From Pavona decussata (lineage: Eukaryota): 64,000 nt of DNA. The notes beneath the pieces are model-generated. The model was not told the origin of the DNA, did not search any database, and saw only the letters and a list, made by a program, of their open reading frames with translations. Positions 2,272-63,896 of this stretch are shown in pieces; position 1 is the stretch's first letter; the number at the start of each line of letters is the position of its first letter. The stretch covers positions 3,224,001 to 3,288,000 of the forward strand of contig CDRNST010000008.1 in the NCBI GenBank assembly GCA_977016875.1. Direction: 5' to 3'. Both the position numbers and the translations under genes were made by a program.

Positions 2272-4663
2272 TTATCTGGATTTGGAAGCTTTCCGATGTA
2301 TTTTGTGATTGTTTGCGTTTAGTCCATCCTGCATGTTAAAGTGCTTGAAATTATTTGACTTCACGTTATTCCCTTCGTTACCAGAACCGCTCATCCCATA
2401 CGGTAATCCGCTCCCGCTAACTTCTCTGCTGCTTAAACGTTCTAAATTCGGAAAGGTGCTTATTTTATTACGAAGGCTGAAGGAACTGTCATCTCCTGCT
2501 TTAGCCTCAAAATCACCCTGACGATGATCGTGATAGAATTTTCGTTCTGCTTCTTCATCGCTGTCTTTGAAGTCGCCATAATCCTCAGTATTGTAGGAGT
2601 CGTCTACTCCTTCCTGCTCTTGTGTTTCACGTGTGGCTCCTTCCTCGTCAAATCCTCCACCTCCCTTAACAGTCCCAATCGTATGACCCATCAAAGCATC
2701 GTACATCTCGTCCTGTTGTGCAGCTACTTTTTCCTCAAGATGGGCCGCCTCCTCAAACTTTTTCTGTGCCTCTGATGACTGTTTCTGATTACCTTCACCA
2801 CCAACAGGTGAGGTGTTGGCAGTGTTTATTGTAGACTGACTTAGTGGGGATTGGATTGGACTCGCAGCTGTCGGCTTGTTTGCAACCTTATACCCTTCTG
2901 CGTCGTTGACTGGACTGAGAGTTTGGGGATTGTTTGAAGATGTTAAATTTAACATCTCATGAATTTTTTTAAAGAATTCTTTCTCTGCCTTATAGAGCTC
3001 TTGTCGGGCTAAAAATGCTTTAACCAACTTTTGAGCTGTACCAAATGCCTTTCTAGCAGCCAATCGTTCAGTAGACAAAACTGGTTGTTGAAAATGCTGT
3101 TTAGGTTCTTGCTCTTGCTTTTGCCCTTGTGCCGTATGACCAAATGATGGCTGTTGCTTCCCGTCCTGCTTTTCAAGCAGGCTCATTTGTTGGTTTGCTG
3201 TTGATTGCCCAAGGGACTGCTGCTGCAAATTCTGTGTCTGAGCTCCTGGTTGTCTTGTTTGAGTTTGTATGTTGAAATTCAATCTTGTGTTATTTTCTCT
3301 TACCGAGTTTGCTTTCTCACTAGTTAGGTTCTTTACAACACTAAGGTGTGCAGCTTTAAGTATGTTACTTATAAATGAGGTGTAGTTTTTCAAAAGTTCA
3401 CGAGCACCTCCAACTGCTTTTTTGTTGGTAGGGCTTTCTTTAAAATCCAAAGAATGGTTGTGTGCTGCAGTTGGTAGCTTTTGCATCAAATTGGCGTGTT
3501 CATTATTTCTTTGTTTCTGAAATGGTATGTCACTAATGAGAACGCCCGTTTTGTTTTTATTAGAGTTTGCCTGTTTAAGCTCTGCTAAAAGGAGGTCCTT
3601 GAGAATCTTTAAATGATGCGCATCGTGTTTTGATTCCTGGGCTGTGGCTATCGGCCGAGTTGTTTCAGGTAGCTTTATGTGTACACTCGTGCCTTGATCA
3701 ACATTCGCCGTCTTATTCCACGGCATTTTCTCAGCTTCCCTAACGGCCATATCGAGCAAAGCAACAGCATTGATAAGTTTAGTATTATTAAGGTGGCTAA
3801 TATCAGTGTTAGTAGGATCCTGTCCAACGCTCTCCCAAACAATTTGCTTGGCTCGAGCAAACGCTGCTCTGGTTAAGTCCGGATCAAATGGTTTACCATG
3901 CTCAACGATGCTTCTCAGTTTAGTAAATAATGGAAAAGAATCAGTGACCATTTTTTCTCCTTTACTTTTTTTCACAGAAGTAGTACTTGATGCTTTTATG
4001 GTCATTTTGTGTTCACCATTCTTTTGGGATTTAGACATATTTTCCAACTGGCCATTCACCTTTTCAAGAAATTTTACTGTCTCCTGTAATGTGTTTTCTG
4101 TATTGACTCGTACTGCTGTTTTGTTTGTGCTCCTTTCTTTGTTGAATTTACTTAGTCCTACAGCCAGTTTTAAAACGGAAGCAAGGCTACCAAGATGCTT
4201 TTTTCTGTGTTTGCGGTGATGGACGCGCTTTGGAGGAATTTCCGGTCTCATGACGACTCTGATGACGTTTGGAGCTTTCTTCACAGTAGAATCAACATTC
4301 AGCGGCTTGCCACCGATCTCCATCTCACGCATAGCATCCGCAAGGAAATTTCTTTTATCATTATTATCCTTTGGTTTCCTGCTTCCTATGATTGTGAAAG
4401 TAAAGATCTTTAAGTTAATATGGGACAATTTTAAATTGACAATAACATTATATTATTGTGGTTGTAATAAGCATTTAACTCCAACTATGCTAGTAAACAA
4501 TGCTTGGACAACACATTACAGTTAAAATAAACCATAGCTGGTTTTTCAGTAAACTAATTTTCACTTCGAAGGTCCAATGAAGATCTAACAATGTCTTCTT
4601 ACCTGAATGGAAAGCAGGAATTATAGGGAGAAAAAATATGAGGATAAGTGACAATTTTCTCAT
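2272..4663 (-). CDS. G1: secreted low-complexity orphan protein, ~724 aa; exons 4663-4603 (signal peptide) and 4385-2272
   Basis: Exon 4663-4603 reads MRKLSLILIFFLPIIPAFHS-G then GTAAG (phase 1). The acceptor tttcacaatcatAG before 4385 restores the frame of the 718-aa ORF; total 2175 nt. The protein is K/Q/N/S-rich and Cys-free, with many N-x-S/T sequons and an acidic region near the C-terminus. Probable 5'UTR introns upstream (acceptor ~4728, donor ~4848). Confidence 0.88.
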
Positions 4664-6175
4664 ATCCGTTTTCTCTTCTTCAGGTTGTAGTTACATTTGT
4701 CAGGTAGGAAGAAGTGGCTTCGCCAAGCTAAAAATGAAGAGCATGAAGTTAAGATTCGGAAGAACGACAGAGCAAAACAATATTTCAATCATTCAAGCAT
4801 GAAACGAGCAGGTGCTTAACACAAGATTCATTTCACTCTTCACTGTACCTGTTATCTTTCTATTTTGTCTATGACAGAAAAAAGAACGCAAAAGTAGGTC
4901 TACGATGCCATTCTAAACAAATGTCAAAACCAAAAGAAGATGTGTCCAATTTTACAGATTACCATCAGTCAGTTTAGCAACAGAGCAAATAATATTCTAT
5001 GATTTAATACATCGATGTACTTGGTGTGATGATGACAGTGTTGGATTAAATAATAACAAAACAATAATTTACACGTGTATGCCCAGTTTCGCAGTCAGTG
5101 AGTCGTAAATAGCAGAGTGTTTTGTGTTTATAAAACATTTGTAGATGGGTTTACCTTGCCTCTAAGAGTAATATCCATGAACGAGCAATGTTTCTGTTCT
5201 GATTCCGTTAGCCATGTCCCGGTAAGAGCCACTTAAGGATGACGTAATGCAGGCAAACTATAGAGACGAGGACAGAGGTCACACACCCTTTGTCACTAGT
5301 AACTTTCCAAGCATCGATGAACAGTTAAAAACTCTTCGCTTTTAATATCTACAATACAGTTTCGCCTGTTAATGTTGACCTTTCTGTAAAGTTATAGCTG
5401 TGAAGGTTTTCACCTAATTGATTTTGAGATATCATCAAAGACATGGCGGATAGGGGAATAGGGTAATAAAGATGCTTAGTACTCAAAACGTTTACCTTAT
5501 GCAAACACAATACAACGAGCCGGAGTTGTGGGTTTACTTTTACATCAGGTTTTGTATTAAGTGACATTTTTATCCCTGTTTAGCCACAAATCCTCTTGAC
5601 AAACGGCGACCAATGCACATTTTTTATTTGTACTCTTGTTATATTTTATTCAGAAGACATGTACGTTTCTTGGATGAACTTGCTGACCATGGAGACCGTT
5701 GTCTGGTTTGTCTTTTGAAGTTTTGGAGAATTACTGCAAAACGTTGGAACTGCAGAACCCTTCGCTCCCCACGCCCCCTACCAAACAAAAACGTGCACTT
5801 GGCCTTGAGTCGGTTTGAGAGAGTCCTGGTAAACTTGTAGGCACATGTGCAAAGCTACTTTCAAATATGGGCCCGGGCCGTCTTTCATTCGTCAGCGTTT
5901 ATTTCTTTAAAATCACGAGGAGATGAAAAGGCACTTTGGTATCGTTGCGTCTTGCCCCTCCCCTTCATTTATGTTGTAATGCATGTCGTCCTAAACTCAT
6001 GTTCTTGTAATTAATTGCTTTTACTCATTCATACTCCAAACCAGATAACGGTCCATTGTGCTTTCGGTAAACAGCAGGGGCCAGTTATTTAAACAGAGTG
6101 TAACTTAGGCCCGGCTTAAGACACTCAGTGGGCCTCCATATCTGTTTCTAAGTGGTTTATTTCCTTAGATAAATA

Positions 6176-62042: not shown

Positions 62043-63896
62043 ATGAAGAAAAAGGTTCTTATGCCATTTTCCCTGTTCGTGATATTTTCATCGATCGTGA
62101 ACGTCCGAACAAAAGGAACAATAGGTACGTCTTCCCAATTTTTCACAGTTTGCCATTTTTTTGAATTATATTACATTTTTATCATCTTCCAACATAGGAT
62201 CTACTCGTTGTGGAGTTTCAACAAATTAACTACCTCTTATCTTTGTCATTTCCTCTCTTGAATTTGGCAAAACGCAAAAGCAAAACATTTTGGTTATATG
62301 TTAGTTTATTTCCTTCGGAGCTCCAGATAAGGGAAGGATATTTTAAAATAAAAGAGGCATGCAACGGAAATTCTATTTCCTCTTTAAGGATGATAAATAG
62401 TGAATGTTGTTGATTAGAAAGAATTCTTGAAAAACTGGTGACTAGCGCAAAAAAAATTTGGTTGGAAGTCACGAATTCTATGAGATTTGCTTTCATTTAT
62501 TTTTACTCGAGAATGCGCGCATGCGCAATGAACGAGTTATCGTGATGTGGGGTAAATGTCACTCAGTCGATCGGTCGGTCGATCTGTCACAAACTTTCAC
62601 ATACGGCGTATAATCGCAGCTCGCTTTAGGTTCCCTCCTCCTTCAATTATAAAAATTCACGTCTTTTGGAGTTCGAAATCAAAAGAAATAGTCTTTAGAA
62701 CACTTGTCTTCGTAAGTTTTTATTTTGGTGACTGAAAGCGCCGCGTTGAAAGCCGCTCAAGGCCGAGATTGTCGTCCAAGTCAACAGGGATTTCGCGCAA
62801 AATGGAGGGAGAAAGTACGATGGATAAACGTCTGAGGGTGTTCCCTGCTCATTCGCGTATTCCTTTTTGGCGTTCCGAAGTAATTTGACTGTTATAATCG
62901 TAGCGCCACGGGTGGCGGATAGTTCGATACCCTCAACAACTTCTCAACAATATCTCCTTCAGGAGTCATGGACATGTTGTGTAGTGGCGTGGTGCGCTTA
63001 CTTAGAAGCAAAGGGAAGCAAATTTTTTCCTTATTTTCTTTTTCTTTTTCGCCTATAAAAGCCGACCACTCCAAAGGCTCCAAACAATTTTCAAAATTAA
63101 GACTTTTTTAAAAAATACAAAACTATCCAAGGGGCTCAATCTTGCTGAGGGGAACGGCTAAAAATCTAAGCGGCGTAGGATGCGGAATGAAATACCCGTG
63201 AGGATCCTTATGAAGCCTTTATGGCTTATATTTCGAGTCCTGGGCCAACCAAACACAATGCGAACAATGTTTTATACCTCGCCACTATTTACTTCTGCAT
63301 TCACGAGTTGGCTTACAGGAGACTTTGATTTTTAACAGGAGGAGATGGTCATAAACCCAAGAGATGGATAAGACACATCTTTCACAAGCCAATCAAACAC
63401 CATCTCAACCTCAAACACAAGAAGCATGACGTGCTTACTCTGGCAGCCCCACCAACAGTCGGCTCCCTTCTTCCCTCAACAAGTACGATGACCCTGATGC
63501 CTAATGGGGTGCCGGCAGCTGCTGGAGAATACATTCATCACCTCATGCACCGTCATCCGCTTAACATTCCGGTGTATCACGGTGGATACCATCCAGTGCA
63601 TGTACCTGAGCATTTTGGACCCCTGGGACCTTTTGGGCACCATTGGTTCTACAGACGAGGTCCGTGGCACAGTTATGGATATGGTGTTCGCTATCCTTTC
63701 TCACATGGCTTCGCATCCGGTCCGTGGTATGGGCCGTTACCTGGACACGGTTTCGGCTATGGGTACCATCACCATTTTGGACATGCACCGTTGCGGGGCG
63801 GATTGCTGAGACATGTTTTAGCTAATTATGGCTATGACCTGGCACACGGGCATAGGCGTGGTTTAGGTTTTGGTTATGGTCACGGATATGGTGATG
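62043..63896 (+). CDS. G10 (3'-partial): secreted His/Gly/Tyr-rich protein; exons 62043-62124 (signal) and 63339-63896, continuing beyond the window
   Basis: MKKKVLMPFSLFVIFSSIVNVRTKGTI-G then GTACGT (phase 1). Acceptor gatttttaacAG before 63339 gives GGDGHKPKRWIRHIFHKPIKHHLNLKHKKHDVL, in frame with the 178-aa ORF. Strong donor G|GTGAGT after 63896. Confidence 0.84.

What the first reader, a model, noticed from the sequence alone, without database searches (positions are those of the whole stretch)
2272..63896. Uninterrupted cluster of ten orphan secreted-protein genes with one shared exon architecture: a candidate undescribed secretory gene complex
Seen: every host gene I can model in 64 kb (G1-G10) has a 58-94-nt exon encoding a hydrophobic signal peptide, closed by a phase-1 GT donor. 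Each donor matches an in-frame phase-1 AG acceptor of the next exon. No recognisable housekeeping gene lies between them. The products are Cys-poor and mostly low-complexity, each with a different bias (Q/K, S/T/N, G/P, N/K, M/G, acidic, D-tail, H/P, H/G/Y). Established: vertebrate SCPP biomineralisation genes form a cluster recognised by shared exon structure rather than sequence (there the introns are phase 0, so this is analogy, not homology). Inference: one ancestral signal-exon cassette was duplicated and diverged into a co-expressed kit for an extracellular material (skeletal organic matrix, adhesive/mucus, cnidocyst or granule content).
Basis: partly seen in the sequence, partly recalled or inferred. 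Interest (0 to 1): 0.93.

Follow-up and report, generated by a model that had tools for sequence, protein, structure and literature searches.

The report
Conserved coral cluster of secreted-protein genes
This stony-coral window holds a real, evolutionarily conserved row of at least fourteen genes for secreted, largely unstructured proteins, all built the same way (a short signal-peptide exon, then one long exon); no database or searched paper describes them and their job is still unknown.

Summary
All ten genes can be modelled with a 58-94-nt exon that carries the signal peptide and ends in a phase-1 GT donor. Such exons occur 9 times against 0.8 expected; phases 0 and 2 are at background.

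Support for individual junctions:
- G8 and G9: spliced contigs of public runs.
- G2, G3 and G7: RefSeq or transcript models of orthologs.
- G7 middle exon: cross-species conservation.
- G1, G4, G5 and G10: still predicted, backed by orthologous signal exons.

The assembly gap lies inside G7 intron 2, and the frame closes without it.

- The cluster is larger than ten: three more genes lie to the left and one to the right.
- The G2 start codon is split (ATGAG|GT).
- G7 has one phase-2 intron.
- G9 and G10 have extra 3' exons.

Gene order is kept in Pocilloporidae. It is also kept, at about 30% identity, in an unidentified distant genome, where each gene again has a phase-1 signal exon.

Common descent is shown only for subsets: G2/G6/G8, G4/G5, and G7 with two left-flank genes. 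No Pfam family, no confident fold and no paper match. Function is inferred only, and a skeletal role is untested. Earlier scan notes cover sub-features of this same stretch.

The parts
4603..4663 (-). G1 exon 1: signal peptide, 61 nt, phase-1 donor CAG|GTAAGA
   Evidence: The G1-like gene in distant locus L020 also has a 61-nt phase-1 signal exon ending ..HS.
2272..4385 (-). G1 exon 2: rest of a 724-aa basic, Cys-free protein
   Evidence: Best in-frame acceptor and open model. The junction is predicted only. Its C-terminal third is 39% identical to an L020 ORF.
18840..18844 (-). G2 coding start ATGAG, followed by donor GTAAGA (phase-2 intron)
   Evidence: Sequence read. The Stylophora RefSeq model has an identical ATGAG|GTAAGA start.
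18345..18415 (-). G2 signal-peptide exon, 71 nt, no ATG of its own, phase-1 donor
   Evidence: tblastn with ortholog N-termini, sequence and open model.
13251..17545 (-). G2 main exon. The protein is 1456 aa with 30 N-glycosylation sequons and 5 Cys.
   Evidence: 31 homologs at 41-95% identity, including Montipora and Stylophora. Over 200 invariant columns. AF2 mean pLDDT 32 for the C-terminal half. Single copy in the genome.
25694..25751 (-). G3 exon 1: signal peptide, 58 nt, phase 1
   Evidence: The homologous N-terminus is present in RefSeq models of five genera and in spliced transcript P0034.
23804..25569 (-). G3 exon 2 (607-aa protein)
   Evidence: The acceptor at 25569 gives a junction Gly followed by FPKHKDR, matching the orthologs.
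30777..30852 (-). G4 exon 1: signal peptide, 76 nt, phase 1
   Evidence: The Stylophora G4 ortholog has a 73-nt phase-1 exon.
28759..30668 (-). G4 exon 2 (661-aa protein with a strongly basic tail)
   Evidence: Acceptor, model. 56% identical to Stylophora and 33% to L020. The junction is predicted.
37081..37141 (-). G5 exon 1: signal peptide, 61 nt, phase 1
   Evidence: The Stylophora ortholog exon is also 61 nt and ends ..QIT.
35612..36690 (-). G5 exon 2 (379-aa, Met/Gly/Gln-rich protein)
   Evidence: 52% identical to Stylophora. The junction is predicted.
42433..42511 (-). G6 exon 1: signal peptide, 79 nt, phase 1
41905..42138 (-). G6 exon 2, 234 nt, phase 1 at both ends
   Evidence: Predicted only.
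40147..40358 (-). G6 exon 3: the SYLTG domain
   Evidence: It is the only other copy of the G8 domain in the genome (E = 1e-6). Alignment A5.
46600..46657 (+). G7 exon 1: signal peptide, 58 nt, phase 1
   Evidence: Conserved without indels in L014 (both copies) and L015. The homologous signal peptide is present in the Pocillopora model and transcript.
47226..47280 (+). G7 exon 2, 55 nt; enters in phase 1 and leaves in phase 2
   Evidence: Both splice sites are invariant and the indels are multiples of three in alignment A1. It is needed to close the frame.
48281..48492 (.). Assembly gap, inside G7 intron 2
   Evidence: The frame closes without it. In L015 the matches to its two flanks lie about 16 nt apart, with no extra conserved block between them. 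No letters were filled in.
49795..51073 (+). G7 exon 3 (463-aa protein with an Asp-rich tail)
   Evidence: Phase-2 acceptor. 29 homologs. The 3' part is covered by contigs of all four runs.
52527..52620 (+). G8 exon 1: signal peptide plus a NRRK site, 94 nt, phase 1
   Evidence: The spliced X1 contig covers 52414-52620 and joins to 53396.
53396..53604 (+). G8 exon 2: SYLTG domain ending HPRG-stop (100-aa protein)
   Evidence: Junction seen, translation. 82% identical in Pocilloporidae.
55637..55700 (+). G9 exon 1: signal peptide, 64 nt, phase 1
   Evidence: Junction 55700|56176 is in X1 and X6 contigs.
56176..56670 (+). G9 exon 2 (His/Pro-rich). If unspliced it reads on to a stop at 56774.
   Evidence: The donor C|GTAAGG sits exactly where an X1 contig leaves the genome sequence.
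57414..57556 (+). Probable G9 exon 3: acidic tail, phase-1 acceptor
   Evidence: Single copy in the genome. 84-88% conserved in L014 and L015 and 69% in L022. In frame. Inferred; no junction-spanning read was seen.
62043..62124 (+). G10 exon 1: signal peptide, 82 nt, phase 1
   Evidence: Junction predicted.
63339..63896 (+). G10 exon 2 (His/Gly/Tyr-rich), ending at a phase-1 donor G|GTGAGT. The gene probably continues past the window end.
   Evidence: 54% identical in L022. A conserved downstream block and an in-frame exon lie at L012:659 onward.

Best explanation
This is an old tandem cluster, kept across stony corals, of at least fourteen genes. Ten lie in the window, three to its left and one to its right. 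Six of the window genes are on the minus strand and four on the plus strand, diverging from a 4-kb spacer between G6 and G7.

SHOWN. Each gene places its signal peptide on a short exon closed by a phase-1 donor. Nearly all of the mature protein sits on one long exon. A few genes add short exons that are mostly phase 1 at both ends.

INFERRED FROM SEQUENCE. The products enter the secretory pathway. They are predicted to be mostly disordered and are Cys-poor. The larger ones carry many N-glycosylation sequons. Many combine basic tails with acidic or Met/Gly/Gln-, His/Pro- or His/Gly/Tyr-rich tracts.

SHOWN FOR THREE SUBSETS, INFERRED FOR THE REST. The cluster grew by local duplication followed by fast divergence. 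Gene order, orientation and the signal-exon plan stayed fixed.

INFERENCE ONLY. The proteins are released together and assemble by charge and low-complexity interactions into an extracellular material or coating. The producing cell type is not known. A skeletal role is one option among several.
For: ARCHITECTURE.
- Scan. Enrichment 9 against 0.8 expected, phase 1 only. Open models.
- Junctions seen in contigs for G8 and G9.
- Ortholog models for G2, G3 and G7.
- Conserved G7 exons.

THE CLUSTER IS LARGER THAN THE WINDOW.. An MFS_1_like transporter gene lies beyond the right end.

CONSERVED ORDER.
- Stylophora keeps G5>G4>G3>G2.
- A Pocillopora-like contig keeps G7>G8>G9>G10.
- G2, G3 and G7 orthologs give the same contig-size fingerprint in six assemblies.
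- Distant locus L020 keeps G4>G3>G2>G1>Lm1 at 26-39% identity. Each of these genes has a 58-64-nt phase-1 signal exon.

DISORDER AND ORPHAN STATUS.
- No Pfam family.
- AF2 mean pLDDT 32 for the G2 C-terminal half and 51 for the SYLTG domain.
- Only 9 hits among 1.84 billion representative proteins.
- No Atlas look-alikes.

DUPLICATION.. One related species has a tandem pair of G7.
Against: - Most gene pairs share no detectable sequence. A single origin for all fourteen is therefore unproven.
- From general knowledge, phase-1 introns next to signal peptides are common in animal secreted genes.
- Four junctions (G1, G4, G5, G10) have no transcript support.
- There is no cell-type, localisation or proteome evidence.
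- Co-expression rests on contigs of one bulk run.
- No shared upstream motif was found.
- G8 is small and unusually conserved, so it may be a signalling peptide rather than a material component.
Confidence: 0.6

Rival explanations
1. Skeletal kit. The cluster encodes organic-matrix or calcifying-space proteins made by calicoblasts, as a coral counterpart of the vertebrate SCPP cluster.
For: - All named homologs are from stony corals.
- Acidic Asp-rich tails occur in G7 and Lm2. The G7 tail is conserved in Pocillopora.
- From general knowledge, Met/Gly-, His- and Gly/Tyr-rich secreted proteins occur in other biomineral matrices.
- From general knowledge, proteins with few tryptic sites are easily missed by skeletal proteomics.
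Against: - Most products are basic, with pI 9-10.
- The Stylophora G2 and G3 orthologs are not in the held part of a Stylophora skeletal-proteome supplement.
- A syntenic cluster at about 30% identity lies in a GC-richer, probably non-scleractinian genome.
Confidence: 0.25
2. Non-skeletal secretion. The cluster supplies gland-cell, mucus-layer, antimicrobial, adhesive or cnida contents that are older than the skeleton.
For: - Synteny in a distant unidentified genome.
- Basic, His/Gly/Tyr- and His/Pro-rich products.
- Many N-glycosylation sequons in G1, G2 and G4.
- Contigs present in runs of colony samples.
Against: - No named sea-anemone homolog appeared in three word-based searches or in the profile search.
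- There are no mucin-type tandem repeats.
- There are no Cys-rich cnida motifs.
Confidence: 0.3
3. Mixed neighbourhood. Several unrelated, fast-evolving secreted genes sit together, and the shared exon plan is only the generic animal signal-exon layout. There would be no common origin and no joint function.
For: - Most pairs show no similarity.
- No shared promoter motif.
- The products differ widely in size, from 100 to 1456 aa, and in composition.
Against: - All fourteen consecutive genes follow the same plan, with none of another kind between them.
- The order is frozen over deep divergence.
- Three motif-linked subsets span both strands of the cluster.
Confidence: 0.15

Closest known systems
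Vertebrate SCPP cluster (enamel, dentin, bone, milk and saliva secretory calcium-binding phosphoproteins)
   Same: Both are tandem clusters of secreted, disordered, fast-diverging proteins that are recognised by exon plan rather than by sequence. In both, the signal peptide sits on its own short exon and gene order is conserved.
   Different: From general knowledge, SCPP introns are phase 0, the family derives from SPARCL1 and it carries SxE phosphorylation motifs. Here the introns are phase 1, with two phase-2 exceptions. SxE counts are unremarkable. There is no sequence or Pfam link, and the host is a cnidarian.
Coral skeletal organic matrix proteins (CARPs/SAARPs, acidic SOMP, USOMPs, galaxins)
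   Same: Both are secreted coral proteins, some with Asp-rich tracts. Some of the known genes are also tandemly arranged, for example three acidic genes in Porites.
   Different: The known ones are mostly acidic, or carry recognisable domains, or are Cys-rich. The Porites paper reports homologs of its skeletal proteins in sea anemones. The cluster proteins are mostly basic, have no recognisable domain and were not found in the one proteome list checked.
Mammalian epidermal differentiation complex and insect glue or chorion gene clusters
   Same: Both consist of many neighbouring genes of one simple exon plan that encode low-complexity structural products made together by one cell type (general knowledge).
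   Different: There is no homology. The epidermal differentiation complex products are intracellular. Whether the coral genes are made together by one cell type is untested.

Membership tests
Vertebrate SCPP family | All introns within the coding region are phase 0 | tested here: not met
   The signal-exon donors of all ten genes are phase 1. G2 intron 1 and G7 intron 2 are phase 2.
Vertebrate SCPP family | Descent from, and linkage to, SPARC/SPARCL1 | tested here: not met
   No Pfam family, SPARC domains included, in any product. None was seen in the 20 kb on each flank.
Vertebrate SCPP family | Signal peptide on a separate short exon, and a disordered secreted product | tested here: met
   This is a shared working principle, not evidence of membership.
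Coral skeletal organic matrix proteins | Detected in cleaned skeleton by mass spectrometry | tested here: inconclusive
   The Stylophora G2 and G3 orthologs are absent from the held supplement text of one study. The other members and other studies were not checked.
Coral acid-rich proteins (CARP/SAARP) | Strongly acidic protein (the pI below 4.5 cut-off quoted) with long Asp/Glu runs | tested here: not met
   Only G6 is acidic overall (pI 4.3). Seven of the ten have pI 9.1-10.0, and G2 and G7 about 6.5. G7 and Lm2 have acidic tails only.
Mucins | Long Pro/Thr/Ser tandem repeats plus VWD or cystine-knot domains | tested here: not met
   No long tandem repeats lie in the coding exons. No Pfam domains.
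Cnidocyst wall proteins (minicollagens, NOWA) | Cys-rich domains and collagen triplets | tested here: not met
   0-5 Cys per protein and no Pfam match.
Cnidarian neuropeptide precursors | Several peptide copies flanked by basic sites, each ending in an amidation Gly | tested here: not met
   There are no repeated peptide units. Only G8 has one basic site after the signal peptide and a C-terminal Gly.

The most novel reading that the evidence does not exclude
The cluster is a previously unrecognised, hexacoral-wide gene complex, analogous to SCPP. Its co-secreted disordered proteins would build a defined extracellular material, such as the organic layer on which the coral skeleton is laid down. 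It would have existed before calcification and been taken over for it.
Probability: 0.2. Interest if true: 0.85.

Novelty: new variant of a known kind. Interest (0 to 1): 0.62.

Why it matters
Published accounts read here hold that the known calcification proteins of corals came from older genes or from a few duplications. A conserved block of at least fourteen orphan secreted genes that no searched paper mentions is therefore a sizeable unexplored part of the coral secretome.

If it maps to calicoblasts, it would add a missing set of matrix candidates. It would also be an independent case of an SCPP-like cluster.

If it maps to gland or mucus cells, it bears on surface defence and adhesion.

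In either case the shared exon plan and fixed order give a practical way to find these fast-evolving genes in new cnidarian genomes. They also allow existing misannotations to be corrected.

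Tried and rejected
- Pfam on all long frames: nothing. Rfam on the window: nothing.
- All-against-all BLASTP of the long exons: nothing significant.
- ESM Atlas look-alikes for G2 and G3: no usable hit.
- AF2 of the G2 C-terminal half (pLDDT 32) and of the SYLTG domain (pLDDT 51). 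Both were too poor for a fold search, so none was run.
- k-mer search for a shared motif in the 300 nt upstream of twelve start codons: nothing above background.
- Direct phase-1 joining of G7 exon 1 to the long exon was rejected. The only good acceptor (49795) is phase 2, and joining there gives a stop. This led to the 55-nt middle exon.
- A 116-nt ATG exon at 49629-49744 was rejected for G7. It would leave a 50-nt intron, has no signal-like peptide and is not needed.
- Naming the organism behind the distant loci L020 and L021 failed. Their clusters carry no names, and no paper cites the sample codes.
- The Stylophora cell-atlas supplement held as text is too small to contain the gene tables.
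- Joined spliced models were not sent to any search tool.

Full report
SOURCE AND SETTING

The window is G000:C8:3224001-3288000 of a 602-Mb assembly. It has 39% G+C and a CpG ratio of about 0.8. Homologs of its genes carry names only from stony corals: Montipora, Acropora, Stylophora, Pocillopora and Desmophyllum. The genome is therefore a scleractinian coral. The one assembly gap is at 48281-48492.

Nine long open frames of 95-1435 aa stand out. Six are on the minus strand and three on the plus strand. None hits Pfam.

A mechanical scan looked for ATG-started hydrophobic mini-ORFs that end at a good donor. It found one on the same strand upstream of each long frame except G2, plus one for the small gene G8. 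All are phase 1.

With stricter cut-offs the window holds 0, 9 and 1 such exons in phases 0, 1 and 2. First-order Markov shuffles give about 0.8 per phase, with a maximum of 4. The signal is about eleven-fold above chance and confined to phase 1.

For each gene the first in-frame acceptor at the head of the long frame is a good pyrimidine-rich YAG site. All ten spliced models are open, with GT..AG throughout.

INDEPENDENT SUPPORT FOR THE JUNCTIONS

- G8. A contig of run X1 joins 52620 to 53396, skipping 775 nt (GT..AG). It then runs unspliced to 53825.
- G9. Contigs of X1 and X6 join 55700 to 56176.
- G3. RefSeq models from Acropora (four species), Montipora (two), Stylophora and Desmophyllum begin with the homologous signal peptide, then Gly and a [LF]xKH motif. 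So does a spliced JGI transcript. The window model has the same start.
- G2. The signal exon (18415-18345) has no ATG. Five coding bases, ATGAG, sit 425 nt upstream before a GTAAGA donor. The Stylophora RefSeq model starts with the identical ATGAG|GTAAGA.
- G7. The long exon's only good acceptor (49795) is phase 2, so exon 1 cannot join it directly.
  - A 55-nt exon at 47226-47280 solves this. Both its splice sites are invariant, and its indels in two other species are multiples of three.
  - Exon 1 is conserved without indels.
  - A Pocillopora meandrina model and a spliced transcript begin with the homologous signal peptide.
- Assembly gap. It lies in G7 intron 2 and the frame closes without it. 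In a related species the matches to its two flanks are about 16 nt apart, with no extra conserved block between them. No letters were filled in.
- G1, G4, G5 and G10. These junctions remain predictions. They are backed by orthologous phase-1 signal exons of nearly the same length in Stylophora and in a distant locus.

REFINEMENTS TO THE GENE MODELS

- G9 probably has a third exon at 57414-57556. A GTAAGG donor sits at 56670, exactly where an X1 contig leaves the genome. The downstream block is single-copy and 84-88% conserved, and it is in frame in phase 1.
- G10 ends its long exon at a phase-1 GTGAGT donor (63896). It seems to continue beyond the window.
- G6 has three exons with phase-1 introns.

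THE CLUSTER IS LARGER THAN TEN GENES

The 10 kb to the left hold three more minus-strand long frames of the same kind. Lm1 has a 55-nt phase-1 signal exon. Lm2 and Lm3 are Met/Gly-rich.

The 10 kb to the right hold one more plus-strand gene (R11) with a 67-nt phase-1 signal exon. An MFS_1_like transporter gene follows on the right.

Between the cluster genes only a reverse-transcriptase fragment is recognisable.

CONSERVATION OF GENE ORDER

- Stylophora contig LSMT01000116.1 keeps G5>G4>G3>G2 in one orientation at 47-56% identity. Each gene has its own signal exon. The RefSeq 900-aa model there fuses the G5 and G4 orthologs.
- A Pocillopora-like contig keeps G7>G8>G9>G10.
- Two closer species are collinear over G7-G9. 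One of them has a tandem pair of G7.
- Orthologs of G2, G3 and G7 show the same contig-size fingerprint in six assemblies.

A profile of the G2 C-terminal half was searched against 1.84 billion representative proteins. It found only nine proteins. Two are distant, at about 26-30% identity.

One of these two lies on a 1.39-Mb contig (L020, 48.6% G+C). That contig carries G4-like, G3-like, G2-like, G1-like and Lm1-like frames in the window's order and orientation. Each is preceded by a 58-64-nt phase-1 signal exon. Its organism could not be named. Judged by divergence alone it probably lies outside Scleractinia; this is inference.

WHAT THE PROTEINS ARE

- They are Cys-poor, with 0-5 Cys each.
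- Seven of the ten are basic (pI 9.1-10.0). G6 is acidic, and G2 and G7 are near neutral.
- N-glycosylation sequons are frequent in the larger ones: 30 in G2 and 11 in G1.
- Tandem repeats are few.
- G2 has more than 200 invariant columns across eleven corals. Even so, AF2 gives a mean pLDDT of 32 with only short hairpins and one helix. This fits a disordered chain studded with conserved short motifs.
- The Atlas and Pfam give nothing.

EVIDENCE FOR COMMON DESCENT

Shuffle-calibrated local alignments link three pairs:
- G6-G8, z = 19
- Lm2-Lm3, z = 8.4
- G7-Lm2, z = 7.0

The G6/G8 domain occurs only twice in the genome, both times in this cluster. A DA[NH]GxP..[TN]TAxE motif is shared by G2, G6 and G8. 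LMFG is shared by G4 and G5, and QMQN by G7, Lm2 and Lm3.

Duplication within the cluster is therefore shown for three subsets covering eight genes. For the others it is inferred from position and exon plan only.

FUNCTION

Nothing here shows the cell type or the location of the products. G7, G8 and G9 contigs occur together in one bulk run. No shared upstream motif was found.

Four searches for 24 accession or locus identifiers found no paper. The Stylophora G2 and G3 orthologs are not in the held part of one skeletal-proteome supplement.

My best reading is joint secretion and assembly into an extracellular material through charge and low-complexity interactions. Skeletal matrix (about 0.25) and non-skeletal gland, mucus or cnida secretion (about 0.3) are open alternatives.

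COMPARISON WITH KNOWN SYSTEMS

The cluster works like the vertebrate SCPP cluster in layout. It fails SCPP's defining tests of phase-0 introns and SPARCL1 descent. It also does not fit coral acid-rich proteins, mucins, minicollagens or neuropeptide precursors.

It is best described as a new, unrelated instance of a known kind of genomic arrangement.

PROCEDURAL NOTES

Joined spliced models were never sent to search tools. Exons were searched by reference and the joined step was left out.

Noticed in passing
window 52527-53604 (G8): G8 is only 100 aa. It has a NRRK basic site soon after the signal peptide. In four species it ends in HPRG-stop, and a C-terminal Gly is the usual amidation donor. 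At 82% identity to Pocilloporidae it is far better conserved than its neighbours (37-56%). It may be a signalling peptide rather than a matrix component.
   Followed up: partly
L019:1081-7099 (Stylophora LSMT01000116.1): The RefSeq 900-aa gene model covers both the G5 and the G4 ortholog. Each of these has its own phase-1 signal exon, so the model is probably a fusion error.
   Followed up: partly
P0023 (Montipora capricornis XP_068754425): The G2 ortholog is named 'homeobox protein 5-like'. No homeobox or any other Pfam domain is present in G2, so the name is probably a low-complexity artefact.
   Followed up: partly
L014:3393-4565 and 9889-11124: One related species carries two tandem copies of G7. 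Each has its own conserved signal exon and upstream region.
   Followed up: partly
window 51600-52000: This stretch has very high contig depth in all four runs (up to about 7900), many loose ends and non-canonical joints. It is a high-copy, transcribed repeat lying between G7 and G8.
   Followed up: no
window 45747-46031: A reverse-transcriptase (RVT_1) fragment lies in the divergent spacer between G6 and G7. A further repeat-like frame at 47891-48196 lies in G7 intron 2 next to the assembly gap.
   Followed up: partly
window 15749-15780 (G2), 40246-40277 (G6), 53461-53492 (G8): The short motif DA[NH]GxP..[TN]TAxE is shared by three otherwise dissimilar products. Parts of it are invariant across the eleven G2 orthologs aligned. 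Coordinates are computed from residue positions.
   Followed up: partly
L013:2993-4630 (G000:C8:3300993-3302630, minus strand): A single-exon MFS_1_like transporter gene (E = 1.6e-79) is the first ordinary gene to the right of the cluster. It probably marks the cluster's end.
   Followed up: partly
L010:6050-6104 (+) and L010:1224-1275 (-): Two more phase-1 signal-like mini-exons with strong donors lie 14-19 kb left of the window, with no long open frame nearby. The cluster, or other small secreted genes, may extend further left.
   Followed up: no
window 33619-33706 (-) and 43127-43232 (-): These are additional phase-1 hydrophobic mini-exons between G4/G5 and G6/G7. They have no matched long exon. 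They could be chance or parts of small unmodelled genes.
   Followed up: no
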